Shown one piece after another: positions 4,317-59,503 of a stretch of DNA of 64,000 nt. Numbering within the stretch: the stretch's first letter is position 1; every line of letters begins with the position of its first letter. The stretch spans positions 124,001 through 188,000 of IMG/VR virus record IMGVR_UViG_3300005529_000001, one strand, 5' to 3'. The notes below the pieces were generated by a model that was not told the DNA's origin, did not search any database, and saw nothing but the letters and a program-made list of their open reading frames with translations. The translations under genes were made by a program, and so were the position numbers.

Positions 4317-5423
4317 ATGCTCCCGTATGACTATCTGATCGTAGGTGCAGGTCTGTTCGGATCGACTTTCGCGTGGCACGCTAGACAACGTGGCAAGCGT
4401 GTCTTGGTCATAGACAAACGAAACCACGTGGGCGGGAACTGCTACACCCACCAGGTTGAAGGGATCCACGTCCATGCTTATGGCCCGCACATCTTCCACA
4501 CGAGCGATCAACAGGTCTGGTCATTCGTCAACAGGTTCGCTAGCTTTCACAAGTACGTGCACCGGGTCAAGGCTCGGCACGGTGACAAGCTGCTATCTTT
4601 GCCCGTCAACCTGATGACGTTCAACAAGCTATGGGACGTAAAGACGCCAGAAGAAGCCGAGGCAAGGCTCCAACAAGCCAGGACAGTTTGCCCGCATCCC
4701 AAGAACATGGAAGAGTGGGCCCTGTCGCAGGTCGGACCCGAGATCTACGAATTGCTCTTCAAACACTACACCACCAAACAATGGGGCCGAGACCCAAACC
4801 AGATGCCCGCCGCTGTGTTGAAGCGTCTGCCGATCAGGCTCACCTGGGATGACAACTACTATGATGACAAGTGGCAAGGGATCCCAACTGGCGGCTACAC
4901 CCGGATATTTGACGGGCTGTTAGAGGGCTGCGATGTCCGTCTGGGAATCGACTATCTGGCACACCGTGAAGAGCTTGACAAGCTAGCACGGGTTGTGGTG
5001 TACACAGGCCAAGTAGATGCGTATTACGATTACGCGTTGGGCAGGTTAGAATACCGCACGCTTGACTTTGAAACAAAGGTAATCCCCCACAGCAACTACC
5101 AAGGTTGCGCACAGCTGAACTGGACGGGCCCAGAAGTTCCCTGGACTCGGACAATCGAACACAAGCATTTCGAACTCACCGATGTGCCTGCTACCGTTGT
5201 CACGTGGGAGACACCTGCAGCGTACAAACCGGGTGATGAGCCCTACTACCCGATCAACGATACTAGGAACAACGATCTCTACATGAGGTATAAAGACCTA
5301 GCCGATCACGAACCCGGGGTCTTGTTTGGCGGACGGCTGGGAACCTATCGCTATTTTGACATGCACCAGGTGATTGCACAAGCAATGCACCTGGCGAAAC
5401 AAGAAGGGTTGATTGATGTCTGA
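4317..5423 (+). CDS. glf: UDP-galactopyranose mutase
   Basis: YDYLIVGAGLFG, GGNCY, YGPHIFHT, YTTKQWG, GRLGTYRYFDM; alternative start 4299. Confidence 0.95.
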   Translation: MLPYDYLIVGAGLFGSTFAWHARQRGKRVLVIDKRNHVGGNCYTHQVEGIHVHAYGPHIFHTSDQQVWSFVNRFASFHKYVHRVKARHGDKLLSLPVNLMTFNKLWDVKTPEEAEARLQQARTVCPHPKNMEEWALSQVGPEIYELLFKHYTTKQWGRDPNQMPAAVLKRLPIRLTWDDNYYDDKWQGIPTGGYTRIFDGLLEGCDVRLGIDYLAHREELDKLARVVVYTGQVDAYYDYALGRLEYRTLDFETKVIPHSNYQGCAQLNWTGPEVPWTRTIEHKHFELTDVPATVVTWETPAAYKPGDEPYYPINDTRNNDLYMRYKDLADHEPGVLFGGRLGTYRYFDMHQVIAQAMHLAKQEGLIDV

Positions 5424-6117
5424 CGTTCTTGCTTCTTTCTTGCTGCCATCTCGTGGACGAATCGATCGTTTGGTCCAGAGCATGCAATCAGTTCACCGTC
5501 GCAACGGCAACGTCTCACGTTGGGGTGAGATTCCCAACTATGAGTTCCTGATCCGTGCCGATGACGATGATGTCGCAACAGTCAACGTGCTTAAGAAGCA
5601 CTACGTTGGTGATCCGTACACTCGGGTCACGTTTGGTCCACGTGGACGTGGTTACCTGGACCTGCACTTGATGGTCAACGAGCTCGCCGCGCAAGCACGG
5701 GGTGAGTTCTTGGTCCTCTGGAACGACGATGCATTCATGGTCACTCCAGACTGGGATGACGTGCTGTTAAAGCACCTCAATGATCCACCCCTGATTTACC
5801 ATCCGACTTCTGCGGGCACCACTCGTAACATCTTTCCGATCGTCCGCCGTAGCATCTACCAAGCCATGGGCCGGTTTAGCGAGAGCGCCCTTAACGATTT
5901 TTACGTCTGGACGCTTGCAAAAAGGCTTGGTATCAACACGCAGATCAACATTGATGTCCGCCATGACCATCCGCAAGTTGGTGGGACAACGATCGATCAG
6001 ACGTACGTCGATGCAATGAAAGCGTGCACCGTTGTCAAAAATGACGACAAAGACCCACGGATCTTAGCGTGCTTGGACGAAGACGAAGCAAAGATCCGAG
6101 CGCTTCTCAGTAAGTGA
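5413..6117 (+). CDS. GT-A (GT2-like) glycosyltransferase
   Basis: LLPSRGR, IRADDDD, ARGEFLVLWNDD; overlaps glf stop. Confidence 0.75.
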   Translation: MMSDVLASFLLPSRGRIDRLVQSMQSVHRRNGNVSRWGEIPNYEFLIRADDDDVATVNVLKKHYVGDPYTRVTFGPRGRGYLDLHLMVNELAAQARGEFLVLWNDDAFMVTPDWDDVLLKHLNDPPLIYHPTSAGTTRNIFPIVRRSIYQAMGRFSESALNDFYVWTLAKRLGINTQINIDVRHDHPQVGGTTIDQTYVDAMKACTVVKNDDKDPRILACLDEDEAKIRALLSK

Positions 6118-6886
6118 GAAGTTGTCGCCAGTGTTCAGGCATGAGCTGAACCTCGCCCACCGCATATGGATCCCCGAATTGGTTTGACTGTTTATCGATA
6201 TTAGCGAACACATCAATAACAGACTGACGATCAGCGATGTTTAACCGGGCTGAATGACGACGGAAATACTCGTCAACATCGAGACACCAACCGTGAAGTA
6301 ACGACAGTGTTGGGTCAATTGGCTCATTGACTTGTTTGATACCATTCAAGTAAAAGTTATGGAAGCCCCTCTGGTACGTCATTGGCACTTTTGTCACCAG
6401 TGTCTTGTCATACATGGGTAGCCTCCACATCGACCGTCTGTCAACAAGGAGTTGAGCGCCTGGCGTCCGTGACAGCATCGCTTCACCCGGTTGTTGTACC
6501 ACATTCCACCCAACTGCACGTCTCCACTGGTCTTTTGACTTCAGGAAACGCTCACAATAGTCTCGCAAGTTAACGTACTTGGCATTGGGGATCAGGAACT
6601 CGTCGGTCTCGGCAAAGACAACGACGGGGTAGCGTTGGAGCAACTCACGTTGCATTTGCTCAACAACCTGTTTCAAAAACAGACTGACGTGAGTTCCACG
6701 TGACGGCACACACACAAAATTGACCCGAGGGTGAAGCAATCGTGCTTCTTCCACGCTCCCATCATCAGTTGAGTTATCGATCACATAGACGTCTTCAGGC
6801 GGAAAATTGCTGGTGTAGTAATTCAGCCACGTCCGGAGAAACAACGGCTCGTTTCGTGTGATGGTAAAAGCAGCGAAGTCTCCCAT
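6107..6886 (-). CDS. GT-A glycosyltransferase (Glyco_tranf_2_4/GT92-like)
   Basis: ITRNE..FL..WLNYY, VIDNSTDDGS, FAETDEFL. Confidence 0.75.
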   Translation of the reverse strand: MGDFAAFTITRNEPLFLRTWLNYYTSNFPPEDVYVIDNSTDDGSVEEARLLHPRVNFVCVPSRGTHVSLFLKQVVEQMQRELLQRYPVVVFAETDEFLIPNAKYVNLRDYCERFLKSKDQWRRAVGWNVVQQPGEAMLSRTPGAQLLVDRRSMWRLPMYDKTLVTKVPMTYQRGFHNFYLNGIKQVNEPIDPTLSLLHGWCLDVDEYFRRHSARLNIADRQSVIDVFANIDKQSNQFGDPYAVGEVQLMPEHWRQLLTY

Positions 6887-6923
6887 GTGTAGATTCTACT
6901 CTTCCATGATTTAAAGTGTTGCT

Positions 6924-7268: not shown

Positions 7269-7275
7269 TGCTTAG

Positions 7276-9491: not shown

Positions 9492-9915
9492 TATCGTACG
9501 TATCTGGCCCCTTCGCTGGGTGAGCCGCCGCTAGTTCCCTAGCGACTGCAACGGCTTGTGATTCCATCACCCTGACATCTTGTGCGGCTTGGAAGGCCTT
9601 CCAGTAGAGCCATGAGGCTCTCAGCCCCTGGGTCACTGCGACCAAACCAAGGGCAAACCAGGGGCTGCGGTGAGCAACGAGACAAGCCAGTGTCAGCGCA
9701 ACCATGCTGATGACTGAGCCTGCCGCTGTCCCCCACGCGATCCGACGCTCCCGGTGAGCGTGGGCCGTGTCACGGTAGAACGACAACGCTAGGCCGAAGC
9801 CCACCGCTTCATCCTCAGAGACCTGGTTCCAGTCGACCCTTGAGACCTCATCAGTCATCAGGGCATCGATCTGGATGTCGACGGCTGGGATCTTGACCTC
9901 ACTGCTCACTTGCAT
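9463..9915 (-). CDS. two-TM membrane protein
   Basis: Two hydrophobic helices; start overlaps groEL stop region. Confidence 0.6.
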   Translation of the reverse strand: MQVSSEVKIPAVDIQIDALMTDEVSRVDWNQVSEDEAVGFGLALSFYRDTAHAHRERRIAWGTAAGSVISMVALTLACLVAHRSPWFALGLVAVTQGLRASWLYWKAFQAAQDVRVMESQAVAVARELAAAHPAKGPDTYDSGSPFPEAG

Positions 9916-11548
9916 GCTCCTTGCTGGGCTCATCAAAGATGACAGCGTCCAGCGACAGGAACGTCGTTGCCACGCTGGCGGCGTGCTTCAAAGCTGACCG
10001 GGTCACCTTCACGGGATCGATCACGCCCGCCTTGACGAGGTCCTCGTACTCTCCTGTCGCTGCGTTGTAGCCCAGCTCGTCACCCGCCGCGAGCTCGTGC
10101 TTCTTGTGTTCGAGCTCAGTGAGAATGACGCCGGGAGTTGCACCTGAGTTGCTGACGATCTTGTGCAGCGGGCCGAGGCAGGCCCGGAAGACCGCGTTGG
10201 CTGCCTGGACCTCTTCGGGGTCAACACCCTCAGCCTTGCCAACCTGGCCCTTGACGGCATTGACAGTGTTGAACAGGGCCATGCCGCCGCCGGGGACGAT
10301 CCCCTCTTCCGCGGCCGCTTTGGTCGCATTGAGAGCGTCTTCGATCCTGAACTTCCGCTCTTGCATCTCGATCTCGGTCGCGCCGCCGACGCGGATCACC
10401 GCGACTCCGTTGGCAAGCTTCGCTGCTCTGACACGAAGCTTCGTCAGCTCGTCTTGGGACAACGAGATGTCAGCCATCTGCGTCCGGATCTCTTCGACCC
10501 GAGCCTTGACAGCGTCCTTGGTCTTGCCGGGTCCCACCAACGTTGTCACCTTGGCGTCGGACACCACCTTTGACAGGCTGCCCAGATATTTGCTCTCGAA
10601 CTTGTCAAGCGATGCACCCGTTGCGCTGGAGATCAGCGTGGCCCCCGTCAACACGCAGATGTCTGCTAACAGGTCCTGACGGTGCTGGCCGTAACCGGGA
10701 GCCTTGACGCAAACAACCGGGAGCTTGTTCTGGACACGGTTGATGACGAGACCCGTCATCGCGTCTCCCTCGAAATCCTCCGCAATGAGGAGCAGAGGAG
10801 ACCGGACTTTCATGACCAGCTCTAGGATTGGCATGATGTCCTTGAAGCTTGAGATCTTCTTGTCGGTGATGAGGACCGTCGCGTTCTCATAGACCGCACG
10901 CATCCTCTCGGGATCGGTAACGAAGTACGGAGACACGTACCCGCGGTCAAGCTGCATGCCCTCGACCACCTCCATCGTTGTCTGCATGCCCTTGGCATCT
11001 TCGACAGTGATGACACCGTCACGTCCGACCTGTGCCATCGCATCAGCGATCTGCCTGCCGATGGTCTTGTCACCGTTAGCGCTGATGGTCCCGACCTGAG
11101 CGATCTCGTCGTCAGTCGTCACGGGCTTGGCGTGAGCTCTCAACCCCTCCAAGATCAGGTCAACGGTAGCATTGATGCCTCGGCAAACCGCCAATGGCGA
11201 TGCGCCAGCCTCGACAAGCTTCATCCCTTCCTTGACAAGGGCTTGTGTCAGGACGCTCGCTGTCGTCGTCCCATCACCAGCCACGTCGTTGGTCTGGCTT
11301 GCAGCTTCCCTGACAAGGTCAGCGCCCATCCGAGCGACGGGATCGCTGAGCTTGATCGATTTCGATACCGTCACCCCATCCTTCGTGACAAGGGGTGCCA
11401 TGCCCTGGCGCTGGATGAGGACCGTCTTGCCCCTGGGGCCCAGGGTGCAGCCGATTGCGTCAGCGGCCTTGTTGAGGCCCTCCATCAGCTTTTTACGAGC
11501 TTCGCTACTGAAGATGATCTGCGTTGTTGATTCGCCGGGTAGGTTCAT
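9899..11548 (-). CDS. groEL: chaperonin GroEL
   Basis: TLGPRG, TKDGVTV, AGDGTTT, GANGD-like TISANGD, EGMQLDRGY.SPYF, GGATEIE, IVPGGG, GVIDP.KV. Confidence 0.97.
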   Translation of the reverse strand: MNLPGESTTQIIFSSEARKKLMEGLNKAADAIGCTLGPRGKTVLIQRQGMAPLVTKDGVTVSKSIKLSDPVARMGADLVREAASQTNDVAGDGTTTASVLTQALVKEGMKLVEAGASPLAVCRGINATVDLILEGLRAHAKPVTTDDEIAQVGTISANGDKTIGRQIADAMAQVGRDGVITVEDAKGMQTTMEVVEGMQLDRGYVSPYFVTDPERMRAVYENATVLITDKKISSFKDIMPILELVMKVRSPLLLIAEDFEGDAMTGLVINRVQNKLPVVCVKAPGYGQHRQDLLADICVLTGATLISSATGASLDKFESKYLGSLSKVVSDAKVTTLVGPGKTKDAVKARVEEIRTQMADISLSQDELTKLRVRAAKLANGVAVIRVGGATEIEMQERKFRIEDALNATKAAAEEGIVPGGGMALFNTVNAVKGQVGKAEGVDPEEVQAANAVFRACLGPLHKIVSNSGATPGVILTELEHKKHELAAGDELGYNAATGEYEDLVKAGVIDPVKVTRSALKHAASVATTFLSLDAVIFDEPSKEHASEQ

Positions 11549-11554
11549 GCCCAG

Positions 11555-11584
11555 ATTCTATACCTGGGCAGATCACCTGTTCAG
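11555..11584 (-). promoter_or_regulatory. putative promoter CTGAAC-N18-TAGAAT, leaderless groEL
   Basis: TAGAAT 6 nt before ATG 11548; no SD. Confidence 0.55.
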
Positions 11585-11772
11585 GTGTCAAACAAGATGC
11601 CCAACGTCTGGTTGACTTCTTCCTGCTCCGCAGCAGTGAGGGACTCCGATAGCTTGATGATCTCTTCGTGAATCTTGGCGAATTTGACAGCCCTCGGCGT
11701 TCCCGGGAAAGCTGGACACAGCTCTGTCAGCTCCTTGGTCAGCTTCACCAGCTTCTGAGCGTTTGGGCTCAC
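11581..11772 (-). CDS. hypothetical protein
   Basis: GTG start overlapping upstream TGA. Confidence 0.5.
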   Translation of the reverse strand: MSPNAQKLVKLTKELTELCPAFPGTPRAVKFAKIHEEIIKLSESLTAAEQEEVNQTLGILFDT

Positions 11773-12059
11773 GCCTCGTATTCCTTGGTGACCTTGACGT
11801 AAACGGGTTGGCCCTTGCGCCACGCTACAGCGATGTTTCCCTTCAGGTAATCATCGATCATCGCCATCAAGACCAGCTTCTGTTGCGGGTCATTGGCTTT
11901 GTTAGCGTAGCGGAGCAGCTTGCGTTCCGTGAAGTCGACGACATTACGAAACGAAGACCCGCCGTGTAACTGAAATTCAGTGCAGCGTTCCTTCCTCTCG
12001 GGTAGGTTGGCAGCGTTGCGTGTAGCCATTGCTGGTCTAAGTAGGCCGTCAGCGCTCAT
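11769..12059 (-). CDS. hypothetical protein (start 12059 or 12029)
   Basis: GGAG before ATG 12059; TACTTA 8 nt before ATG 12029. Confidence 0.6.
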   Translation of the reverse strand: MSADGLLRPAMATRNAANLPERKERCTEFQLHGGSSFRNVVDFTERKLLRYANKANDPQQKLVLMAMIDDYLKGNIAVAWRKGQPVYVKVTKEYEA

Positions 12060-12347
12060 GTCATCACTCCGGGTTCAAATGACAACACGCCGGCTTTCCC
12101 GGCGCGTGTCAAGGAATCATGAGCGTTGGTCAACGTTAGGCTAGGTGATGATGTCTCCGAGCGATCCATGACATTACCATTGTAACTCTAAGTAGGGGTG
12201 ACCACCATCACTTTCTTTTTTCTTTGAGTTGCTTCTTGAGCTGTTCTTTGACGCTCTTCTGAGCTTTTTTCATCGCTCGTTTGAGGCTTCCCGCTTTTTT
12301 GATGTCATCCCACTTGAGAAGATCAGCAACGGTAGTATATTGTGTGT

Positions 12348-13904
12348 CTACTCGTCTGCATCCTCGTCGTCCGGGTCTAAAGGGTCACAATCATCCTCAC
12401 CCCCACCTTGCATGGCAACGATAGCATCTTTTAGCTGGTCCGGCGTGATCTCATTAACTTCACCAACATCTCCAAGACTAACTGGTTCGCTTGACGTCGT
12501 CTTAGCTACTGTTGCAGGTCTAGTCGCTATCGCAGCTTTCACGACGGAGATCATCCGTTGTATGCCGTCATCATCTTCATCGCGGTATTTCTCGAGCTTC
12601 TTGACCCGCGTTGCTAGCTCCCTGACGCTATCTGCGGCATCTTCTTTGTTCAGGTACGTACGCCTGACAACATACTCGTTGACAAACGCGATGGGCCAGT
12701 CCTTGACCAGGTCAAAGCCATCAGCGTAATCCCCAAGCACGTGCTGGACGACTTCTTCATCCATCTTGTCAATCAAAACCAGCTCATCGATGCGTCCAGG
12801 ACGGAGCAAAGCATCATCGAGCTTTTTCTTGTTGTTGACAGTGACGATGACCAGCTTCACCTTTTCTTGGAAGTACTCGAGCGTCTCGAGCAGCTGCGCT
12901 TGGTGATGTGTCCGATCAAAATCATCCAAGATGACAGCGTCAGGTTGGAAGATATTGAGGGCCTCGAACAGGGTCGAGTTGTCGAGCTGGCCCAGGTCTG
13001 CGATGCGGATCCGGAACGACCTCAGCCCCATCAGTTCTACGATCGTGCGGGCAAGCGTGGACTTGCCGGTCCCGGGCGGGCCGTAAAACATCACGCTCCT
13101 GGGCACCCCCGCCGCGAGAGGTTTCTTCAGGTACGTTGCGTAATCAACAGCACGCTTGGATTGCTTGGACTCGAACGCGTCATCTTCTTCAAAGACGACA
13201 CGTGCTTCGTTGTCCTTCAAAACGAGCCGGTTGTTCTTCCGCATCACCAAGCTCTTCCCCTCGAACTGTTCCCACAACAGCTTCTTGATGAAAGTCTTTG
13301 CTTCATCTACCCGTTCGGTCTCGACGTAGATGCTGTCAACCAGATGCAGCCGGCCCGTGTATTGCCAACCGATCTTGATGCCATTGGGCAATGCCAACAA
13401 CCTAATGAACGTGTTTTCTTCTGACGTCTTGATCTTCTCGTATGGGAACTTCTGGAGCACGTGGAGCAATGTCTGGGTGAAGTCCTGGCTGTAGGGCTCG
13501 GTCCACTCATCACCAGCGAAGTAATCTTCATTGTACGTCTCAACGTCTTCGACCATCAGCTTGCCCATGCTGAACGTGGCCTTACCTGCCGTCCACCATG
13601 ATGGCTTGTCAAGGAATGGCGTTGCGGCCTCAAACAGCTGGGTTCCCAACGCAAACGCTCGCTTGACCTTGTGCATGCTGAGGAAACGCCTGACCTCTTC
13701 GACCAGGGGCATCTCTTTCACTACCTTGAGCAGGTCTTCTTCTTCGTTTGGCATCAAACCACCGCTGTTTTTCGTTTCGCTGGGCGTAGCATACTTTTCG
13801 TTTTCAAGCTTGTCTTTCATTCGTTCGATTAACCGATCAGCTTCAATTTCAGCCTCAGCCTGATCGAGCAACTCCTTTCGAAACTTCTCCCAGTCAGTTC
13901 CCAT
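12348..13904 (-). CDS. classical-clade AAA+ ATPase
   Basis: Walker A GPPGTGKS, Walker B VILDDFD, SRH LDDALLRPGRID. Confidence 0.9.
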   Translation of the reverse strand: MGTDWEKFRKELLDQAEAEIEADRLIERMKDKLENEKYATPSETKNSGGLMPNEEEDLLKVVKEMPLVEEVRRFLSMHKVKRAFALGTQLFEAATPFLDKPSWWTAGKATFSMGKLMVEDVETYNEDYFAGDEWTEPYSQDFTQTLLHVLQKFPYEKIKTSEENTFIRLLALPNGIKIGWQYTGRLHLVDSIYVETERVDEAKTFIKKLLWEQFEGKSLVMRKNNRLVLKDNEARVVFEEDDAFESKQSKRAVDYATYLKKPLAAGVPRSVMFYGPPGTGKSTLARTIVELMGLRSFRIRIADLGQLDNSTLFEALNIFQPDAVILDDFDRTHHQAQLLETLEYFQEKVKLVIVTVNNKKKLDDALLRPGRIDELVLIDKMDEEVVQHVLGDYADGFDLVKDWPIAFVNEYVVRRTYLNKEDAADSVRELATRVKKLEKYRDEDDDGIQRMISVVKAAIATRPATVAKTTSSEPVSLGDVGEVNEITPDQLKDAIVAMQGGGEDDCDPLDPDDEDADE

Positions 13905-14103
13905 GTTGGCCCTCGGTTAGTCTCCGTTTCGGTGCGTGAGTAGCCACGGTCACCGTGATGATAGCGTCAGGTCCCACGAGCTCGAAGCCACGACGAATCG
14001 CGTCAACGACCCGCTGGATCGTGACCCGAGCATCAGCACCGCCGACCTTTAGGGTCAGGGTGCTGACGGCATCATACTGTTCGACGTGCGGCGCCTCACT
14101 CAT
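13894..14103 (-). CDS. hypothetical protein
   Basis: Fills gap between NRDE and AAA with overlapping ends. Confidence 0.45.
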   Translation of the reverse strand: MSEAPHVEQYDAVSTLTLKVGGADARVTIQRVVDAIRRGFELVGPDAIITVTVATHAPKRRLTEGQHGN

Positions 14104-14869
14104 TGGTTCCAAGCAAACGACCAGCAAGCGTCAGACTGGTTTGCTGACAAGCAGGTCCTTCCTTGTACCAGTACTCCGCAACCCCTTGATTGGACACGGT
14201 GATGAGGGAGGAGCTGACGGTGCCAAAGCTGTGTTCGTCAGCATGGACGCAAATAGCCTGGAACGGATCGTCTTTTGCTTGCCTGTGCGAGAAGTGAGAG
14301 GCGAGCGTGATGCACAGGCGCGTGCAGACCGTCTGGATGTCACCCACATATGGGTCCATCGTCAGGCTCCATGCCATTCGCTTTGTCCACTCTGTCTTCT
14401 CAGCGTACCGGTCTCCCCAGCAGTCATTGCTGATGACATTGAAGCCCGTTGGCATGGGCTGCATCTCGACGGATTGACCTTCTAACACTCGCGTCAGGAA
14501 CATCGCACCCGGCCTGCCAAAGACCAAGTTGAATGGGTTAAACCACTTTGGGTTAAGCTCTGACAGGATCCTCGCGGCTGCGGTGTGGTTTCCACACTCC
14601 AATAGCTGGCGAACCACCTGGCCTCGCGACAGCTTATTGTCGTCATGGTGACCATCATCCTGGTTGGTGATGCCAACGAACCACCCGCCATCCCCCACCC
14701 CGATCCACGTGCCTCCCCTGACCTCATCAATCGGTGCGATGTAGTTGCGACCCGGGATCGTCAGCAGTTGGGGTGCTAACGATCTCCTTCCGTACAGCTC
14801 GTCACGGTTGGCCGCGACGATCAGCGGGTAACCAGGAACAACTTCGTCAAGGACGATGAGCGTACACAT
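14096..14869 (-). CDS. NRDE/TANGO2-family Ntn hydrolase
   Basis: MCTL, AANRDE, GGTWIG, ITN, SRG. Confidence 0.9.
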   Translation of the reverse strand: MCTLIVLDEVVPGYPLIVAANRDELYGRRSLAPQLLTIPGRNYIAPIDEVRGGTWIGVGDGGWFVGITNQDDGHHDDNKLSRGQVVRQLLECGNHTAAARILSELNPKWFNPFNLVFGRPGAMFLTRVLEGQSVEMQPMPTGFNVISNDCWGDRYAEKTEWTKRMAWSLTMDPYVGDIQTVCTRLCITLASHFSHRQAKDDPFQAICVHADEHSFGTVSSSLITVSNQGVAEYWYKEGPACQQTSLTLAGRLLGTNE

Positions 14870-14872
14870 GGC

Positions 14873-24028: not shown

Positions 24029-24216
24029 TTGAACTCTTCGAACGCCTTGGTCAACATCGCATCAGATCGTTGGCAACGAGCTTGGGTTTCGTTGTCAACT
24101 GATCCCGATTTTCGATACTGAGCGTATGCCATCTTGAGGCATCGTTGTCGTTCAGCAACGGCAATACGAAGCTGCACATACTCCCACGGGATGATGTTGT
24201 TCATTCGCACTTGCAT
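24025..24216 (-). CDS. hypothetical protein
   Basis: Fills gap, overlapping both neighbours. Confidence 0.45.
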   Translation of the reverse strand: MQVRMNNIIPWEYVQLRIAVAERQRCLKMAYAQYRKSGSVDNETQARCQRSDAMLTKAFEEFK

Positions 24217-24926: not shown

Positions 24927-24933
24927 GTTTGCC

Positions 24934-54117: not shown

Positions 54118-54125
54118 GACAGTAA

Positions 54126-54689
54126 CTATCGCCGGGCCAGAGCTTGGTAGATGGCTTCCTGCAGGGTCAACACCTCGACCCCAGCGCTTTTCAGGAGATC
54201 GATCCCATCAGTGATCCGATACGGGATCTCATAGACGACTCTGGCAATCTCCGCGTTGACGATCAGCTTCGCACACTCCTTGCACGGGCTGTTCGTCACG
54301 TACATGTGCTTCGGTCTGGCAAAGTTGTAGTCGCACTTGACGAGAGCGTTGACCTCAGCGTGGACAGTGCCGCTCTTCCCGCGTTCGAGCGATTCAACGT
54401 GATTGGGACCGCCCTTCCACATCCCGTTGTACCCTACGCTGAGCATCTGCGTGTTGTTCGACGAAACGACGATCGCTCCCACTTTCAATGCCGGGTCGAT
54501 CGAGCGCAAAGCGATTGTCTTTGCGACCTGCATCCAGACTGACGGCCAGGTCGGACGTTCGGGTTCCTTGTCCTCAACGAGAACAGTCAAGCAGAACTTG
54601 CACGTCTGCCCACCGGCATCATTCTCCACCCAATGATGGAAGATGTCTTTGGTGTTTGCTAGACACGCTTCGTTTAGGTTTCCCATCAA
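54126..54689 (-). CDS. dCMP deaminase
   Basis: VGAIVV, SVGYNG, HAEVNAL, SPCKECAKLI. Confidence 0.92.
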   Translation of the reverse strand: MMGNLNEACLANTKDIFHHWVENDAGGQTCKFCLTVLVEDKEPERPTWPSVWMQVAKTIALRSIDPALKVGAIVVSSNNTQMLSVGYNGMWKGGPNHVESLERGKSGTVHAEVNALVKCDYNFARPKHMYVTNSPCKECAKLIVNAEIARVVYEIPYRITDGIDLLKSAGVEVLTLQEAIYQALARR

Positions 54690-55861
54690 GCCCCCACCAT
54701 GGATTGGAACAACTCGCTCTCAAGGCGATGGATTTCCTGGCCTAGCGCTTTGCCCGAAAACCCCTGTGCCATCAGGGGCTCACCCCTGAAAGGCTCAGAG
54801 CCCAGGTACCGCAAGAAAGCATCGAACTCTGCGTTCGAGGGCATCCCGCGAGCACGAACGTACTCAACGTACATCGTGAAGGCGTCATCTTCTGACATGC
54901 CCAGGGCTTTCTCGGCCTTGCGGAGCTTCAGAGCGGTGTCCTTCGTGATGTTACGGAGCCGGAGCAAGAACGTGACTTGCGCGACCTCGTCAACCGAGTA
55001 CTTCAGGTGAAGCAGCTTTTTCCCCAACGTCTCAAGGTTCTCATCATCCAAGATGAGAGCTAGCACGACCGGGACGGTGTTGGAATCGACCCCACGCGTA
55101 GACACGAGGTTGTCCAGGTACGTTGACACTTTGAGCCCGGGCAGCACCCGATCCCACAACCCCAACGACGTCATGAGGTTCATCAACCGTTGTGGTTTCT
55201 CAGCTGCTACGATCGACTTGACAAGCTCGTCCCGGACCCGTTCAAACGAGACGCCATCAAGGTTGTTGTCACGCTGAATGGCTGCGAACGTTTCTTTGGA
55301 GATCTCAAAGCCGAGCTTGACTGCGAACCTGATGGCTCGCAACACCCTGAGCCTGTCTTCGGCAAACCTGTCCTCGGGACGTCCAACCGTCCTGATGACC
55401 TTGTGACGAATGTCATCGAGCCCGCCGACTAGGTCAACGACCTCTTGCGCGGTGATGTCATAGAACAGAGCGTTGATCGTCAGGTCCCGACGTTGCACGT
55501 CTTCCTTGATCGTCGCGAAGCGTACCTGTGGGTGGCGACCCGCGCTCAGGTCCTCACGGAACGTTGCGATCTCGTACTCCTCGGAAGGAGACCCATCGTG
55601 GGTGTACGTCCTCGTTCGGATGACGCCGAAAGCCTTGCCGACTGCATCCGTTAGCCATCGTCCCGTGGTGTGGAGCAAGCGCTCCACTTGGTCAGGAGTG
55701 GCATCAGTTGCGAGGTCGAAATCCTTGGGCTTCTTGCCCATCACCGCGTCACGCACTGCACCACCGACCAGGTGCAGTGCGTAGCCATTCGTATGAAAGA
55801 GCATCGCCAGCGATTTGACATCGCTGTGCAAGTCAATCTTGAGAGGCTGACGGACTACCAT
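54686..55861 (-). CDS. cca: class II CCA-adding enzyme/tRNA nucleotidyltransferase
   Basis: LVGGAVRD, DFDLAT, EIATFR, DVQRRDLTINAL, EDRLRVLRAIRF, VSFERVRDEL. Confidence 0.9.
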   Translation of the reverse strand: MVVRQPLKIDLHSDVKSLAMLFHTNGYALHLVGGAVRDAVMGKKPKDFDLATDATPDQVERLLHTTGRWLTDAVGKAFGVIRTRTYTHDGSPSEEYEIATFREDLSAGRHPQVRFATIKEDVQRRDLTINALFYDITAQEVVDLVGGLDDIRHKVIRTVGRPEDRFAEDRLRVLRAIRFAVKLGFEISKETFAAIQRDNNLDGVSFERVRDELVKSIVAAEKPQRLMNLMTSLGLWDRVLPGLKVSTYLDNLVSTRGVDSNTVPVVLALILDDENLETLGKKLLHLKYSVDEVAQVTFLLRLRNITKDTALKLRKAEKALGMSEDDAFTMYVEYVRARGMPSNAEFDAFLRYLGSEPFRGEPLMAQGFSGKALGQEIHRLESELFQSMVGA

Positions 55862-55867
55862 GCGGTC

Positions 55868-55897
55868 ATCCTACCATCGTTGGTGGTTGGTTTTCAC
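55868..55897 (-). promoter_or_regulatory. putative promoter GTGAAA-N18-(TGG)TAGGAT, leaderless
   Basis: 6 nt before ATG 55861. Confidence 0.55.
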
Positions 55898-56475
55898 TCT
55901 TTCGCGATGTTCGCTCGTTTGTCAACGGCAAGATGGTGGCGAAAGCAACGCGGCTCATAGAGCTCCGCGCCACCGACCTGGATCTCCTCGCCGTCTGTCT
56001 GTTTCTTGTGAGTGTAGAAAGCGTCACGCCCACATTCAGTGCAGACCGCTGCACATTTTTCGACATGCGTTGCCCAAGCCATCAGCTTCTCGACCTCGTG
56101 GAATGGCTTGCCCAGGTATGACAGGTCCAACGTTGAGACCACGACATCGATGCCGAGCTGGTAAAGGTAGATCAGGACGTCGGCGACGCCCGGGATCATG
56201 AACGCTTCGTCAACGGCAACCACCTCGGGCATCTGTTCCGCTTCCGCAAGCGCGCCCAAGATGTCTGACCCCTCCTTGACAAGGGTAGCATCGTGTTTCC
56301 AGCCCGAGTGACTGACAACCTCAGTGTTGCTGTACCTGGCATCGATCGCGGGCTTGAAGACCTGGATTCGCTTGTGTTGGTACTTGGCACGCTCAAGAGC
56401 GAGCAACAGTTTCGTCGTTTTTGACGAGAACATTGCGCCCGCGAAGACCGTCAGCGTTGGGTTCTGCCCGCTCAT
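55894..56475 (-). CDS. tdk: thymidine kinase (type II)
   Basis: GAMFSSKTT, KP.ID.RY, AVDEA.F, C..CG, YEPRC..H. Confidence 0.93.
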   Translation of the reverse strand: MSGQNPTLTVFAGAMFSSKTTKLLLALERAKYQHKRIQVFKPAIDARYSNTEVVSHSGWKHDATLVKEGSDILGALAEAEQMPEVVAVDEAFMIPGVADVLIYLYQLGIDVVVSTLDLSYLGKPFHEVEKLMAWATHVEKCAAVCTECGRDAFYTHKKQTDGEEIQVGGAELYEPRCFRHHLAVDKRANIAKE

Positions 56476-57029
56476 GCGAACCTATGTTCCAGGATGACGA
56501 AGGGAGCGCGGCACACCGAGTCATACCTTGCTGCAGCCTCAAGGGCTAACGTGATTCGTTTCTTTGGGTCCATTTGCATGTCTCTTGTCGCGTACATTGC
56601 CCCGTTGGCAACTTGCGCGCCCACACCGATGCAACAGTAATCATCCTGAGGACAACCAACATCAAAATCTTCTTCGATGGAATAGAGCTTGCCGTTGTAT
56701 CCCACCAGCAACCCAACCGAGTGAAACTCTTCTTCGTCTTCCCTCTTCAGAGATCCTTTTTCCTTGTGCAACTCTCTGACAGCATCGATGAAGTTGATGA
56801 CCATGTAAGCCATGTCATCGTGCTTCTTGGGCTTGTCAGGTGCTTCGAAAGCGTACCGCAACAGCTGTCCCACACGGAAGCTTCCCGCAAAACCTATGAT
56901 GAAGTCACCGTTGATGAAGACTTTTTCGTCAGCCCGGCCGAGAACAGAGGTGCCTTTCGTATCGGATGCCAACGAATCAGCACCCATATAGATCACGCCG
57001 TTCTCGACCAAGCCAACGATACAGGTCAT
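56472..57029 (-). CDS. HslV/proteasome-like Ntn peptidase, paralog 1
   Basis: MTCIVG (Thr1), GADS, KVF, IGFAGS, IGVGA. Confidence 0.8.
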   Translation of the reverse strand: MTCIVGLVENGVIYMGADSLASDTKGTSVLGRADEKVFINGDFIIGFAGSFRVGQLLRYAFEAPDKPKKHDDMAYMVINFIDAVRELHKEKGSLKREDEEEFHSVGLLVGYNGKLYSIEEDFDVGCPQDDYCCIGVGAQVANGAMYATRDMQMDPKKRITLALEAAARYDSVCRAPFVILEHRFA

Positions 57030-57033
57030 GGAC

Positions 57034-57603
57034 TCAGTTCCGGTTCTTCACCACCAGCGTATCGAACGGTGGAGCACAGCCTGCGTTCTTGGTAGAAGCT
57101 TCGAGTGCCATGAGAACACGCTTCTTGGCGCCGCCCCACATTTTCTTGGTCGCTTCGAACGAACCGAGCGCCAGCTTGCTGCCGCTGCCGACAGAAGCAA
57201 ACTTCTCATCGCCTTCGACCAGCTGAAAGTTACCCTCGAGCGTGTAGAGATGGCCACGATAAGCGACCAACATCGCGCCTTCAAAGCAGATCTCACCGTT
57301 ACCGCCGAATGGGCTGTTGTCAGGACCCGCTGCGTCGAGCTTCTTGAGGCCCTCGCGGATCGCTGGAACTAGCTCGGTCACTAGGAACTGCCTATCATCG
57401 CCGCCTGCCTGGATGGGCAGCTCGATGCCATGTTTTAGCGCGTCCATGACCTTGGGCAGGCCGCAGACACCAAAGCCCACATCGCCCTTTGCAAAGATCT
57501 TGGGCTCCTTGAGCAAGGTCCTATTGAGACCGCCATCCGTGGCCGCCCGATCTCCGCCGAGCCACACCTTGTTCCCATCAACCAAACCGACTATGCAGGT
57601 CAT
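57034..57603 (-). CDS. HslV/proteasome-like Ntn peptidase, paralog 2
   Basis: MTCIVG (Thr1), GGDR, KIF, SVGSGS..ALG. Confidence 0.8.
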   Translation of the reverse strand: MTCIVGLVDGNKVWLGGDRAATDGGLNRTLLKEPKIFAKGDVGFGVCGLPKVMDALKHGIELPIQAGGDDRQFLVTELVPAIREGLKKLDAAGPDNSPFGGNGEICFEGAMLVAYRGHLYTLEGNFQLVEGDEKFASVGSGSKLALGSFEATKKMWGGAKKRVLMALEASTKNAGCAPPFDTLVVKNRN

Positions 57604-57782: not shown

Positions 57783-57785
57783 TAG

Positions 57786-58553
57786 TCATCCTTCCTTTGT
57801 GTTGTACGGCGAGTCTGGGTAGAGTTCACGGTATTGTGACTTGGATACGGCGATCTCTCCCGTCTTGGTAAAATGGTCTACCAAGTAGAAGTGTCGCTCG
57901 TAGACGTGGAGACTGCCTGCGCTCCAGTGAATGTCACCCTCAGGCAACTGGAGATCCTTGGCAAGGTTGGCAAGGACGGTATACTGCCAGGCTCGATCGT
58001 TCTTGTAACCCAGAACCGCGTCATTGGATCGCATCTGGACCACGGCATGAAGAGCACCATCACGGACTAGGTACTGTACCGCGTTGGTGCACATGAAGTC
58101 GCTCCGGCCATCGATGTTGTACTCCTCCCACATCGAGGGACGGGTGTAGATGACAACAGCCCTCCGGCTCTCCGGGTTTTTCTTGAGCTCGGCCAGCACT
58201 TTTGTGTACTGGCCACCGTTCTCTGGGCTGTAGGTCGTCCACCCGTAGTTGCTGTTGATGGTACCGTCCTTAGAAGCGACAGCTTTCCACACCGTGGGTG
58301 CCCCGCCCGGGATGTCATTGACGTTCCGGCTCTGGCTCATGTACCACATCTCCTCGCGGTGGATGTAGTCCCAGTCAACCTTGCCGAACAGGGCGTCGTC
58401 CGAAGCGATGAAGTTAGCCCCAACGATCTCAATCGTCCTCTTGCCAACCAGAGAGGTCATCGACGCTTCCCGGTTGACGCTAGTGAATTTCTCCTCGGCA
58501 AGAAGAGAAGCGAATTGGTCCCTGATCGACTGCGTTGAATTGTAGAGCGTCAT
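57786..58553 (-). CDS. dCMP hydroxymethylase (T4 gp42-like, thymidylate synthase superfamily)
   Basis: KRTIEIVGANF, INSNYGW, NPESRR..IYTRPSM, DFMCTN, MRSND..GYKND.AWQ, GSLHVYERHFYLVDH track recalled T4 gp42; Asp rather than TS Asn. Confidence 0.9.
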   Translation of the reverse strand: MTLYNSTQSIRDQFASLLAEEKFTSVNREASMTSLVGKRTIEIVGANFIASDDALFGKVDWDYIHREEMWYMSQSRNVNDIPGGAPTVWKAVASKDGTINSNYGWTTYSPENGGQYTKVLAELKKNPESRRAVVIYTRPSMWEEYNIDGRSDFMCTNAVQYLVRDGALHAVVQMRSNDAVLGYKNDRAWQYTVLANLAKDLQLPEGDIHWSAGSLHVYERHFYLVDHFTKTGEIAVSKSQYRELYPDSPYNTKEG

Positions 58554-59503
58554 TTGTTAAGCTTCATCTTTCCGACCCAATCCCAGTTGTCTTCGTACCA
58601 TTTGACGGTCCGATCCAGACCCTCCCAGAACCTGACCAGTGGGACATATCCTAACAACTGTTGTGCTTTTGTCACGTCGGCTTGGGTGTGCATGACATCG
58701 CCGGCGCGCCAGGGCGCGTTGCAGACCTGAGCACCTGGATAACGCTTGCCCAGCTCGATGATGATGTCACGGTTAGTCGTTCGGTCTCCACATGCTACGT
58801 TGATGCACTCAGCATTGAGCAAACCTGATACGTTTCCAGCCTTGACACACGCATCGACAACGTTGTCAACGTAACACATGTCGCGGCTCTGGCTGCCGTC
58901 GCCGTCGCTACGAAGAGGGATGCCCTTCTTGATCGCTGTCAACCAGGCTGACACCGCGGTTGAATACGGGCTGTCACCCAGCTGGTTGGGTCCAAAGACA
59001 TTGAAGAAACGCAAACAAACGCTGTCAAGCTTGTAAAGATCGCGGTACAAGACCAGGTAATCTTCAATGATCGACTTCTGAAGAGCATATGGTGACTTGG
59101 GGTTCTTACGCTCGTTCTCGCTGGTGGGTAGTATGTCAGCCCCACCGTATACCGACGAGCTAGACGCGAAAACGAACCGCTTGACGTTGTCCCGACAGGC
59201 ATCCATCAACGCCAACGTCCGGGACACGTTGACGTGGTTGGTTTCTAGCGGGTGCTCGACTGAGTACGACACCCTGGGAACAGCCGCCAAGTGAAAGATG
59301 ACATCGTACCTGCCCTGCTTTATCTCGTGCAATACATCAGCATGAGCAAAATCTTTCGTGATTACCGCCTGGCCATGAGGTACAAACTCCAGGTGACCGT
59401 TGGACAGATCGTCAACAGTGTCAACATCCCACCCTTCGTCCAAGCAACGCTTGACAAGGTTCGATCCGATGAAGCCCGCGCCGCCAGTGACAAGGACGTG
59501 CAT
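58550..59503 (-). CDS. NAD-dependent NDP-sugar epimerase (GalE/WbpP-like)
   Basis: GGAGFIG, FHLAA, ASSSSVYG, YALQK (YxxxK), RFFNVFGP, GDG.QSRD. Confidence 0.93.
   Translation of the reverse strand: MHVLVTGGAGFIGSNLVKRCLDEGWDVDTVDDLSNGHLEFVPHGQAVITKDFAHADVLHEIKQGRYDVIFHLAAVPRVSYSVEHPLETNHVNVSRTLALMDACRDNVKRFVFASSSSVYGGADILPTSENERKNPKSPYALQKSIIEDYLVLYRDLYKLDSVCLRFFNVFGPNQLGDSPYSTAVSAWLTAIKKGIPLRSDGDGSQSRDMCYVDNVVDACVKAGNVSGLLNAECINVACGDRTTNRDIIIELGKRYPGAQVCNAPWRAGDVMHTQADVTKAQQLLGYVPLVRFWEGLDRTVKWYEDNWDWVGKMKLNK

What the first reader, a model, noticed from the sequence alone, without database searches (positions are those of the whole stretch)
4317..59503. Dispersed route to a furanose sugar donor: pyrophosphorylase -> 4-epimerase -> mutase
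Seen: three enzymes that chain together chemically, namely a UDPGP/AGX-family uridylyltransferase (22955-24028), a GalE/WbpP-like epimerase (58550-59503) and a UDP-galactopyranose mutase (4317-5423). Established: this series gives UDP-Glc(NAc) -> UDP-Gal(NAc)p -> UDP-Gal(NAc)f, and some Glf homologues accept GalNAc or arabinose donors. Inference: the phage can make its own furanose donor. It could feed either the GTs next to glf or the hmC GT, and the latter would give galactofuranosyl-type DNA. The genes are unlinked, so the connection is hypothetical.
Basis: inference. Interest (0 to 1): 0.68.

Follow-up and report, generated by a model that had tools for sequence, protein, structure and literature searches.

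The report
Three phage sugar enzymes, separate modules
The three sugar-nucleotide enzymes are real, but in this uncultivated 369-kb jumbo phage they belong to different gene modules: the epimerase partners a DNA (hydroxymethylcytosine) glycosylation module, while the furanose-making mutase travels with its own two glycosyltransferases, so furanose-decorated DNA is unlikely.

Summary
All three genes exist at the stated coordinates. Glf passes the curated UDP-galactopyranose mutase equivalog cut-off. The 357-aa UDPGP-like protein folds as a compact UGP/AGX-type pyrophosphorylase core. The epimerase is an extended SDR with an intact Ser/Tyr/Lys triad, and its closest solved relatives are group-3 UDP-GlcNAc/GalNAc 4-epimerases (PelX, WbgU, WbpP).

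They do not behave as one pathway. The epimerase overlaps by 4 nt a T4 gp42-type dCMP hydroxymethylase and lies beside a GT4-type GT-B glycosyltransferase and a thymidylate-kinase-like gene. The GT-B, epimerase and hydroxymethylase arrangement is conserved in related jumbo-phage contigs and matches published epimerase-dependent 5hmC glycosylation clusters.

Glf is the head of a 2.6-kb cassette (glf plus two GT2 genes). The cassette is cleanly missing at the syntenic site of relative G009, which keeps the hmC module, the UDPGP-like gene and a UDP-xylose synthase. In relative G016 a separately acquired glf sits inside a large glycan operon. The glf-adjacent GT2's only paralogue lies in the query's own 19-kb glycan operon.

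The UDPGP-like enzyme is the only sugar-1-phosphate nucleotidyltransferase detected, so it is probably a general UDP-sugar supplier.

Verdict: observation confirmed, interpretation partly supported. A furanose donor is plausible, but its delivery to hmC DNA is not supported.

The parts
4317..5423 (+). glf: UDP-galactopyranose mutase, head of the 2.6-kb glf cassette
   Evidence: TIGR00031 at 391 bits, above the 304 cut-off. PDB 4mo2 and 1i8t at E about 1e-127. Member of a 13-sequence jumbo-phage Glf clade with 96/98 support. Single copy in the genome.
5413..6117 (+). GT2a: soluble GT-A (GT2) glycosyltransferase overlapping the glf stop (an ATG lies at 5416); candidate galactofuranosyltransferase
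   Evidence: PF00535 at 25.8 bits, above the 23.3 cut-off. phrog_14945 glycosyltransferase, E 4e-12. Directly downstream of glf in 4 of 4 clade contexts. Its only paralogue is the GT2 at genome 328948-329655 in the glycan operon (35%, 1e-32). No hydrophobic segment.
6107..6886 (-). GT2b: second, convergent GT2-like gene of the cassette
   Evidence: PF13704 at 25.3 bits, below the 27.5 cut-off, and TIGR04440 at E 1e-4. Conserved with the cassette in G003 at 61%, where an extra paralogue also lies upstream of glf. No hits in PHROGs, PDB or phage isolates.
22955..24028 (-). Compact UDPGP-family UDP-sugar pyrophosphorylase; substrate undetermined
   Evidence: PF01704 at 78 bits. AF2 pLDDT 91.7. 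Foldseek ties UGPases and AGX/UAP at E about 2e-23. A Gly-rich loop and a GHGD motif are readable in the sequence. About 100 metagenomic homologues, several on 320-361 kb contigs. No PF00483 enzyme in the genome.
57786..58553 (-). T4 gp42-type dCMP hydroxymethylase, which makes 5hm-dCMP
   Evidence: E 3.5e-74 to 1b49/1b5d, with the catalytic Cys and the Asp aligned to T4 D179 conserved. D169 (E. coli ThyA numbering) is retained, so it is not the 5hoC-synthase type by the criterion read. It is the only TS-family gene in the genome.
58550..59503 (-). UDP-sugar 4-epimerase (extended SDR) overlapping the hydroxymethylase start by 4 nt; proposed donor-maker for the hmC glycosyltransferase
   Evidence: PelX 6wjb E 1e-51, with WbgU and WbpP next. 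Residues aligned with PelX S121/Y146/K150 are Ser/Tyr/Lys. Below all NCBIfam equivalog cut-offs. Found beside the GT-B and the TS-family gene in nearly all related loci.
59537..60058 (-). Small acidic ORF (about 173 aa) of unknown function between GT-B and epimerase
   Evidence: The open frame is conserved with G005 by tblastx at E 3e-39. No Pfam hit (protein 7). Absent in L015, where GT-B and epimerase abut.
60063..61424 (-). GT-B (GT4-like, retaining type) glycosyltransferase; candidate hmC DNA glycosyltransferase. The true start is about 23 codons inside the 477-aa ORF.
   Evidence: AF2 pLDDT 87. Foldseek best matches are BshA, SPS, OtsA and MshA at E 1e-11 to 1e-10. Atlas features point to GT4/GT1. 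18 related viral loci. No hits in Pfam, PHROGs or NCBIfam.
61758..62321 (-). DnaQ/RNase T-type exonuclease lying inside the module in the query lineage
   Evidence: PF00929 at E 2.7e-10. phrog_192, DNA polymerase exonuclease subunit.
62602..63153 (-). P-loop nucleotide (thymidylate-like) kinase; proposed to phosphorylate the modified dNMP
   Evidence: phrog_761 thymidylate kinase, E 7e-9. AAA_28 at 26 bits. Directly abuts GT-B in distant relatives L027, L029 and L031. The same kinase-GT-TS core appears in the clusters tabulated.

Best explanation
The window comes from a complete 369-kb jumbo phage that is rich in sugar-nucleotide genes. The three enzymes serve at least two separate systems.

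(1) DNA module, window 57786-63153, minus strand. A gp42-type hydroxymethylase makes 5hm-dCMP. A thymidylate-kinase-like enzyme helps take it towards the triphosphate, and it is incorporated during replication. The GT4-type GT-B enzyme then glycosylates hmC in DNA, using a UDP-sugar that its partner 4-epimerase makes from a host-type UDP-sugar. The sugar is most likely UDP-GalNAc or UDP-Gal, as a pyranose.

(2) glf cassette, window 4317-6886. Glf converts UDP-Galp to UDP-Galf. The overlapping GT2a, and probably GT2b, transfer Galf to a non-DNA glycan. That glycan is most plausibly the product of the phage's large glycan operon at genome 312-331 kb.

(3) The UDPGP-like enzyme is the only sugar-1-phosphate uridylyltransferase found in the genome. 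It tops up the UDP-Glc and/or UDP-GlcNAc pool for all of these.

Shown here: gene identities, folds, gene linkage, and distribution among relatives. Inferred: every substrate, every acceptor, and whether the DNA is actually modified.
For: Identity of the hmC module:
- The hydroxymethylase matches T4 gp42 at E 3.5e-74 with Cys and Asp conserved.
- It overlaps the epimerase by 4 nt.
- The GT-B fold has pLDDT 87 and matches BshA, MshA, SPS and OtsA.
- The kinase matches a PHROG thymidylate kinase family.
- Synteny holds across the related loci, and every TS-family homologue there has Asp at the cytosine-specifying position.

Precedent:
- GT plus epimerase pairs install Hex, HexNAc or HexA on 5hmC only when the epimerase is co-expressed.
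- A kinase-GT-TS-homologue core is present in the DLP3, RB69 and RL38J1 clusters.

glf is separate:
- The cassette is cleanly absent between conserved flanking genes in G009, which keeps the hmC module, UDPGP and UXS.
- The glf-GT2a pair is conserved in 4 of 4 contexts.
- G016's glf lies next to PseB-like, DegT, GT4, carbamoyltransferase, formyltransferase and GT9 genes, and it falls outside the jumbo-phage Glf clade.
- GT2a's only paralogue is in the glycan operon.
- GT2a's only homologue in an isolated phage (Pelagibacter phage HTVC008M) sits with a methyltransferase, a carbamoyltransferase and Ugd, in a genome with no TS-family gene.

UDPGP as general supplier:
- No PF00483 enzyme in the genome.
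- Single copy.
- Present in every gp42-lineage relative whose contig covers that region.
Against: - No chemistry was done. The DNA modification, the sugar identities and the acceptors are all inferred.
- GT-A-fold phage GTs can glycosylate 5hmC DNA, so the fold of GT2a and GT2b does not exclude DNA as their acceptor.
- Both GT2s are soluble, and no Bac_transf priming enzyme was found. The glycan operon is flanked by replication and metabolic genes, not structural ones. The acceptor of the glycan system is therefore unknown.
- Most relatives are fragments (2-78% complete), so absences outside the syntenic site are weak evidence.
- A phage Glf has been proposed to serve DNA glycosylation in Pootjesviridae.
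- Glf still needs UDP-Galp.
Confidence: 0.6

Rival explanations
1. UDPGP, epimerase and Glf make UDP-Gal(NAc)f. Either the GT-B, or the GT2 enzymes acting as second-sugar adders, put a furanose on hmC or on glycosyl-hmC.
For: - All three enzymes are present and look intact.
- A phage Glf has been proposed as the UDP-Galf source for DNA glycosylation in Pootjesviridae.
- GT-A-fold DNA GTs exist.
- The GT2s are soluble.
- The glf cassette is fairly common in the gp42-type subclade.
Against: - The hmC module is conserved without glf, with a clean syntenic absence in G009.
- glf is always paired with GT2a and never sits beside the hmC module.
- G016's glf lies in a glycan operon.
- The affinities of GT2a's paralogue and of its one isolate homologue are with glycan clusters.
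- The Pootjesviridae Glf is very distant and stands alone without adjacent GTs.
- The epimerase's nearest characterised relative is HexNAc-specific, while Glf looks Gal-type.
Confidence: 0.1
2. A pentose route. Phage Ugd-like dehydrogenases and the conserved UDP-xylose synthase make UDP-Xyl. The epimerase is a UDP-Xyl 4-epimerase that gives UDP-L-Arap. hmC is then xylosylated or arabinosylated, and where glf is present it could give UDP-L-Araf.
For: - UXS matches human UXS1 at E 5e-87.
- UXS is conserved in 9 of 19 related contigs and usually lies 10-13 kb upstream of GT-B, next to the DnaE-type polymerase.
- Two UDPG_MGDP_dh-family genes are present.
- UGM can turn over UDP-arabinopyranose.
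- Pentosylated cytosines exist in phage DNA.
Against: - G016 (78% complete) has the epimerase module but no UXS. G018 has UXS and GT-B but no epimerase.
- The epimerase's nearest solved relatives are HexNAc epimerases.
- Known arabinosyl-cytosine phages use a different donor route, D-arabinose from ribulose-5-P.
- UXS could equally serve the glycan operon.
Confidence: 0.12
3. The glf cassette, and perhaps the glycan operon, remodels the infected host's surface polysaccharide (a seroconversion or superinfection-exclusion type function) and does not decorate a phage component.
For: - glf plus GT2 pairs are typical of bacterial O-antigen and capsule loci (established knowledge).
- The jumbo-phage Glf clade is nearest to bacterial Glfs at 54-57% identity.
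- The cassette is accessory, being present or absent among relatives.
Against: - No Bac_transf-type priming phosphoglycosyltransferase was found in the genome. Flippase and polymerase families were not searched.
- Both GT2s lack membrane segments.
- The phage looks lytic and has a very large genome.
Confidence: 0.13

Closest known systems
Epimerase-paired DNA glycosyltransferase clusters ('subclass II') of Burke et al., bioRxiv 10.1101/2023.12.21.572611
   Same: A GT is adjacent to a sugar epimerase and next to the enzyme that creates 5hmC. In that work the GT's activity on 5hmC depended on co-expressing the partner epimerase, and the products were Hex, HexNAc or HexA. Their GT-B DNA GTs also resemble BshA and MshA.
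   Different: There, 5hmC is made post-replicatively by a C5-methyltransferase plus a TET-like dioxygenase. Here it is made pre-replicatively by a gp42-type TS homologue. The GT-B here has no detectable sequence match in isolated phages. No activity has been tested here.
T4 hmC pathway (gp42 dCMP hydroxymethylase plus alpha- and beta-glucosyltransferases)
   Same: The hydroxymethylase is a close homologue (E 3.5e-74). Both have a post-replicative GT-B glycosyltransferase.
   Different: No member of the T4 alpha-GT or beta-GT Pfam families was found (the controls were uninformative). This phage has its own epimerase and its own UDP-sugar pyrophosphorylase, whereas T4 relies on host UDP-glucose. 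No MazG-type dCTPase was detected.
Pootjesviridae (Rhizobium phage RL38JI) galactosyl-5-hydroxycytosine DNA with a phage-encoded Glf, Lee et al. NAR 2026 (PMC13326640)
   Same: A phage-encoded UDP-galactopyranose mutase is found in a phage with a TS-homologue-based cytosine hypermodification cluster that has a kinase-GT-TS core.
   Different: The TS homologue there carries D169N and makes 5hoC. Ours keeps D169 and has N177D, which is the hydroxymethyl type. The Pootjesviridae glf stands alone without adjacent GTs and is phylogenetically very distant. Ours is fused into a glf-GT2-GT2 cassette.
Bacterial glf plus GT2 galactofuranosyltransferase pairs in O-antigen, capsule and arabinogalactan loci (established knowledge)
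   Same: A mutase is immediately followed by GT-A/GT2 enzymes. Glf is 54-57% identical to bacterial Glfs.
   Different: The GT2s here are small and soluble, and no lipid-carrier priming enzyme was detected. The acceptor is unknown.
Eukaryote-type UDP-glucose and UDP-GlcNAc pyrophosphorylases (UGP, AGX/UAP; PF01704)
   Same: The catalytic core fold matches (TMq 0.70-0.78), as do the Gly-rich loop and the GHGD-type motif.
   Different: It is about 100-150 residues shorter than the solved enzymes (TMt about 0.55-0.6). It matches both substrate classes equally well, and it belongs to a family that is almost entirely metagenomic and viral.

Membership tests
UDP-galactopyranose mutase (TIGR00031 / PF03275) | Score above the curated equivalog cut-off over the full length | tested here: met
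   391 bits against a 303.75 cut-off, covering residues 4-362 of 368. PF03275 at 249 bits.
UDP-galactopyranose mutase (TIGR00031 / PF03275) | N-terminal FAD-binding Rossmann motif and full-length alignment to solved UGMs | tested here: met
   NAD_binding_8 at 86 bits over residues 8-74. End-to-end alignments to 4mo2 and 1i8t.
UDP-galactopyranose mutase (TIGR00031 / PF03275) | Donor specificity: Gal, GalNAc or Ara | tested here: inconclusive
   The positions aligned with C. jejuni UNGM R59 and R168 are His and Lys, as in E. coli UGM. The significance of these residues rests on my memory and could not be verified in the library. An enzyme assay is needed.
UDPGP family (PF01704; UGP/AGX/USP) | Pfam gathering score and catalytic-core fold | tested here: met
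   78.4 bits against a cut-off of 22. AF2 pLDDT 91.7 and Foldseek E 2e-23 to UGP and AGX structures.
UDPGP family (PF01704; UGP/AGX/USP) | Full three-domain architecture of the solved enzymes (about 450-500 aa) | tested here: not met
   357 aa. TM-score normalised to the targets is only about 0.55-0.61, and the Pfam match covers profile positions 31-341 of 413. It is a compact core-only variant.
UDPGP family (PF01704; UGP/AGX/USP) | Substrate: Glc-1-P, HexNAc-1-P or others | not testable with these tools
   Structural matches tie between UGP and AGX/UAP. Source annotations of homologues are split between the two.
GalE/WbpP-type UDP-hexose 4-epimerase (extended SDR) | Rossmann fold plus the Ser/Tyr/Lys catalytic triad | tested here: met
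   PF01370 at 177 bits. The residues aligned with PelX S121, Y146 and K150 are Ser, Tyr and Lys (the residue roles come).
GalE/WbpP-type UDP-hexose 4-epimerase (extended SDR) | Equivalog-level match to GalE (TIGR01179) or TviC (NF011728) | tested here: not met
   145 bits against a 262 cut-off for GalE, and 160 bits against a 760 cut-off for TviC. I therefore file it as a 4-epimerase-like SDR, not as GalE or TviC.
GalE/WbpP-type UDP-hexose 4-epimerase (extended SDR) | Substrate group: 1 = hexose, 2 = both, 3 = HexNAc | tested here: inconclusive
   The ranking of solved relatives favours group 3: PelX, 6dnt, WbgU and WbpP at 144-179 bits, against E. coli GalE at about 84 bits (PelX's group comes). 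Identity is only about 40%, so this does not settle specificity.
T4 gp42-type dCMP hydroxymethylase | Close homology, the catalytic Cys, and Asp in place of the TS Asn177. D169 retained, so not the 5hoC-synthase type. | tested here: met
   E 3.5e-74 to 1b49. The Cys-containing and KND motifs align with those of T4.
Epimerase-dependent 5hmC DNA glycosyltransferase cluster (Burke subclass II) | GT adjacent to a sugar epimerase and to a 5hmC-forming enzyme | tested here: met
   The gene order is GT-B, then epimerase, then hydroxymethylase. It is conserved in most of the 18 related loci.
Epimerase-dependent 5hmC DNA glycosyltransferase cluster (Burke subclass II) | Glycosyl transfer to 5hmC in DNA | not testable with these tools
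   Needs reconstitution and nucleoside LC-MS.
T4 alpha- and beta-glucosyltransferase families (PF11440, PF09198) | Profile match anywhere in the genome | tested here: not met
   No match at E <= 0.1. The control genomes gave no positive hit either, so the sensitivity of this search is unproven.
GT2 galactofuranosyltransferase (GT2a, GT2b) | GT-A/GT2 profile match | tested here: inconclusive
   GT2a: PF00535 at 25.8 bits, above the 23.3 cut-off, and PHROG glycosyltransferase at E 4e-12. GT2b is below cut-off (PF13704 at 25.3 bits against 27.5). Galf-transferase activity is inferred only from adjacency to glf.

The most novel reading that the evidence does not exclude
In glf-bearing members of this jumbo-phage clade, the sugar that the GT-B puts on hmC is extended by the soluble GT-A enzymes of the glf cassette with galactofuranose. 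Alternatively, the GT-B itself uses a furanose donor. Either way the result would be the first furanose-hexose-containing glycan on hydroxymethylcytosine DNA, built from a phage-encoded supply line of pyrophosphorylase, epimerase and mutase.
Probability: 0.1. Interest if true: 0.75.

Novelty: new member of a known kind. Interest (0 to 1): 0.42.

Why it matters
The work separates two things that looked like one pathway.

First, it points to a conserved, self-supplied hmC glycosylation module in an uncultivated clade of 320-370 kb phages. The module has a gp42-type hydroxymethylase, a nucleotide kinase, a GT4-type GT and a dedicated 4-epimerase, and the phage also encodes its own UDP-sugar pyrophosphorylase. 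This combines the T4-style pre-replicative route with the epimerase-dependent GT logic that has so far been shown experimentally for TET-type clusters. The predicted DNA sugar is a 4-epimer (GalNAc or Gal), not glucose.

Second, it shows that phage-encoded Glf is not a reliable marker of furanosylated DNA. Here Glf behaves as part of an accessory glycan cassette. That matters for anyone mining viral genomes for DNA hypermodifications, or predicting sensitivity to type IV restriction and glycosylation-sensing defences.

Tried and rejected
- Near-identity DNA searches of both loci against isolated phages found nothing.
- tblastn of the GT-B and of GT2b against isolated phages found nothing.
- Sequence searches of GT2a, GT2b and the kinase against PDB gave only noise.
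- The T4 alpha-GT and beta-GT Pfam families, MazG, NTP_transferase (PF00483) and Bac_transf were sought in the whole genome and not found. For the two T4 families the controls were uninformative.
- I tried twice to verify in the paper library the UNGM residues that govern GalNAc acceptance, and failed. That argument is therefore marked as resting on memory.
- I considered that the epimerase might be functionally tied to the conserved UDP-xylose synthase. I rated this low because the two genes are not strictly co-distributed.
- I looked for structural genes flanking the glycan operon to support virion glycosylation and found none, so I make no claim about the acceptor.
- The BFVD fold search of the GT-B returned generic phage GT-B enzymes, with one annotated DNA alpha-GT at rank 27. 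That is not discriminating.
- Tools not used: the reads tools, the complex predictor and the large representative-protein search. They could not decide the question.

Full report
**Where the window lies.** The window is bases 124001-188000 of a single 369,475-bp contig. IMG/VR classes it as a complete virus with direct terminal repeats. GC is about 55%. No isolated phage shares near-identical DNA. This is an uncultivated jumbo phage.

All three ORFs are open at the stated coordinates.
- Glf (4317-5423, +) scores 391 bits on the curated equivalog model TIGR00031, whose cut-off is 304. It aligns end to end with the solved mutases of C. jejuni and E. coli at E about 1e-127.
- The UDPGP-like protein (22955-24028, -) passes Pfam PF01704 at 78 bits against a cut-off of 22. 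It has no PHROG or NCBIfam match, and at sequence level it reaches solved UGPases only at E 2.5e-7.
- I folded the UDPGP-like protein with 24 homologues. The model is confident (pLDDT 91.7). It matches UDP-Glc pyrophosphorylases and AGX/UAP UDP-GlcNAc pyrophosphorylases equally well, at E about 2e-23 and TMq 0.70-0.78. At 357 aa it is a core-only version of these 450-500-aa enzymes. Its substrate cannot be read from the data.
- The epimerase (58550-59503, -) is an extended SDR. Its best solved relatives are PelX (6wjb, E 1e-51), 6dnt, WbgU and WbpP, while E. coli GalE scores far lower. The residues aligned with PelX S121, Y146 and K150 are Ser, Tyr and Lys. PelX is a group-3 enzyme that interconverts UDP-GlcNAc and UDP-GalNAc, and it gave no significant UDP-Glc to UDP-Gal conversion. 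The phage protein falls below every NCBIfam equivalog cut-off. I file it as a 4-epimerase-like SDR of unsettled specificity that leans towards HexNAc.

**The epimerase is not unlinked.**
- The gene that overlaps its 3' end by 4 nt (57786-58553) is annotated by Pfam only as thymidylate synthase. In fact it is a close homologue of T4 gp42 dCMP hydroxymethylase (E 3.5e-74). The catalytic Cys is conserved, and so is the Asp that replaces the uracil-specifying Asn of TS.
- By the criterion of Lee et al. 2026, D169N marks 5-hydroxy-dCMP synthases. This protein keeps D169, so it is the hydroxymethyl type. It is the only TS-family gene in the genome.
- Upstream lies a 454-aa protein (60063-61424; the homologues show the true start is inside the 477-aa ORF). 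It has no family match. Its AF2 model has pLDDT 87 and is a GT-B fold. The best matches are the retaining GT4 enzymes BshA, MshA, SPS and OtsA. The protein atlas also points to GT4/GT1.
- Further upstream is a P-loop protein that matches the PHROG 'thymidylate kinase' family (62602-63153).

**The module is conserved.**
- The GT-B has relatives at 18 IMG/VR loci. In most of these the epimerase and a TS-family gene follow it directly. In the more distant ones the kinase abuts the GT-B.
- Every TS-family homologue at these loci has Asp at the cytosine-specifying position. They fall into two lineages, a gp42-like one and a roughly 330-aa one.
- The architecture has two published counterparts. One is the kinase-GT-TS-homologue core of the DLP3, RB69 and RL38J1 hypermodification clusters. 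The other is the 'subclass II' clusters of Burke et al., where a DNA GT sits next to a sugar epimerase and installs Hex, HexNAc or HexA on 5hmC only when the epimerase is co-expressed.
- The simplest reading is that the epimerase makes the donor for the neighbouring hmC glycosyltransferase. No mutase is needed.

**Glf belongs to something else.**
- Its stop overlaps the start of GT2a (5413-6117; PF00535 above cut-off, PHROG glycosyltransferase). A second GT2-like gene converges on that one (6107-6886).
- The glf-GT2a pair recurs at the same site, between a metallophosphatase and a chaperonin gene, in G003, in a 325-kb Logan contig and in a 50-kb ENA contig.
- Relative G009 is 216 kb and collinear with the window. 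There the homologues of the two genes flanking the cassette lie about 290 bp apart. The 2.6-kb cassette is cleanly missing, while the hmC module, the UDPGP-like gene and a UDP-xylose synthase are all present.
- In G016 (267 kb, 78% complete), glf lies 145 kb from the hmC module, inside a long operon. Its neighbours are homologues of the query's PseB-like dehydratase, DegT aminotransferase and GT4 genes, plus a carbamoyltransferase, a formyltransferase, an RmlD-like reductase, GT2 and GT9 genes and a sugar-kinase domain.
- A maximum-likelihood tree puts the query's Glf in a supported clade of 13 jumbo-phage sequences (96/98). G016's Glf falls outside it among bacterial sequences, on a long branch, which is consistent with a separate acquisition. 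The Pootjesviridae Glfs are very distant.
- GT2a's only paralogue in the genome is the GT2 inside the phage's own glycan operon (35% identity, E 1e-32).
- GT2a's only homologue in an isolated phage is gp156 of Pelagibacter phage HTVC008M. It sits with a methyltransferase, a NodU-like carbamoyltransferase and a UDP-glucose dehydrogenase, in a genome with no TS-family gene at all.

**The wider sugar inventory.**
- A 19-kb operon at genome 312168-330652 carries three GT2 genes, three GT1/GT4-like genes, a methyltransferase, a PseB/CapD-type dehydratase, a DegT aminotransferase, a GNAT and two UDP-sugar dehydrogenase-family genes.
- Two more GTs lie at genome 337953-340429.
- A UDP-glucuronate decarboxylase (UXS; E 5e-87 to human UXS1) lies at genome 195690-196688, next to a DnaE-type polymerase.
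- The UDPGP-like gene is the only sugar-1-phosphate nucleotidyltransferase I could find. There is no PF00483 enzyme, and the gene is single copy. I therefore read it as a general supplier of UDP-Glc and/or UDP-GlcNAc.
- It sits among repair and nucleotide genes (NUDIX, Fpg/Nei, 5'-3' exonuclease), not among sugar genes.
- It occurs in every gp42-lineage relative whose contig covers that region, and in none of the three second-lineage relatives that cover it. That pattern cannot be separated from plain relatedness.

- The mutase step is very probably real, so the phage can probably make a furanose donor.
- Glf must draw on UDP-Galp. That could come from the host, or from the phage epimerase if the epimerase accepts non-acetylated substrates.
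- The link to hmC DNA is not supported by distribution, linkage or paralogy.
- It is not excluded. GT-A-fold phage GTs do glycosylate 5hmC. Both GT2s are soluble. No lipid-carrier priming enzyme was found. The glycan operon's flanks are not structural genes. A phage Glf has been proposed to feed DNA glycosylation in Pootjesviridae, although there glf stands alone and the base is 5hoC, not 5hmC.

**Confidence in each reading.**
- Separate modules: 0.6.
- Host-surface remodelling by the glf cassette: about 0.13.
- Pentose route through UXS: about 0.12.
- Furanose on DNA: about 0.1.

**Limits.**
- Every substrate and acceptor is inferred.
- Most relatives are fragments.
- The argument from the UNGM specificity residues rests on memory.

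Noticed in passing
window 59537-60058 (-): A small acidic ORF of about 173 aa fills the 559-bp 'gap' between GT-B and epimerase. It is conserved with relative G005 (tblastx E 3e-39) and absent where the two genes abut in L015. It has no family match.
   Followed up: partly
genome 195690-196688 (L009:8690-9688, -), outside the window: A UDP-glucuronate decarboxylase (UDP-xylose synthase; E 5e-87 to human UXS1) lies next to a DnaE-type Pol III alpha gene. It is conserved in 9 of 19 related contigs, usually 10-13 kb upstream of the hmC module. Its consumer is unknown.
   Followed up: partly
genome 312168-330652 (L008) and 337953-340429 (L044:7953-10429): A 19-kb glycan operon carries GT2 x3, GT1/GT4-like x3, a methyltransferase, a PseB-like dehydratase, DegT, a GNAT and two UDP-sugar dehydrogenase-family genes. 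Two further GTs lie nearby. The flanks are PhoH, a helicase, NAMPT and an exonuclease, not structural genes. The acceptor is unknown.
   Followed up: partly
L021-L024, L027, L029-L031 (TS-family gene next to GT-B): More distant relatives carry a second lineage of TS homologue, mostly about 330 aa, only about 30% identical to gp42 but also with Asp at the cytosine-specifying position and D169 retained. The base it produces is unknown.
   Followed up: partly
window 24201-24962 and 25180-26247 (-): Two genes next to the UDPGP-like gene have no counterpart at this position in the four closest related loci, so they are insertions in the query lineage. One matches phrog_19005 of unknown function. 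The other has no match.
   Followed up: no
window 54686-57603 (-): Downstream of the hydroxymethylase lie two tandem HslV-like peptidase paralogues, a thymidine kinase and a CCA-adding tRNA nucleotidyltransferase. All are conserved in relatives.
   Followed up: no
window 9899-16380 (-): A run of unusual host-like genes: a GroEL-type chaperonin, an AAA ATPase, a TANGO2-family protein and an ADP-ribosylglycohydrolase. They are conserved in relatives.
   Followed up: no
window 19928-20740 (-) and 26293-26856 (-): An Fpg/Nei-type DNA glycosylase and a NUDIX hydrolase flank the UDPGP region. No MazG-type dCTPase was found in the genome, so the NUDIX enzyme is a candidate for the dCTP-clearing role that hmC phages need.
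   Followed up: no
L008:9880-10482 (genome 320880-321482): An ORF with a REase_MTES_1575-like domain sits in the middle of the glycan operon. It has a homologue in the unrelated position L030:13581-13928. It looks like a mobile endonuclease insertion.
   Followed up: no
L034:7207-7986 (relative G003): G003 carries an extra paralogue of GT2b (38% identity) immediately upstream of glf, so the cassette varies in GT content between close relatives. The 325-kb Logan contig has three genes of 262-313 aa on the opposite strand after GT2a.
   Followed up: no
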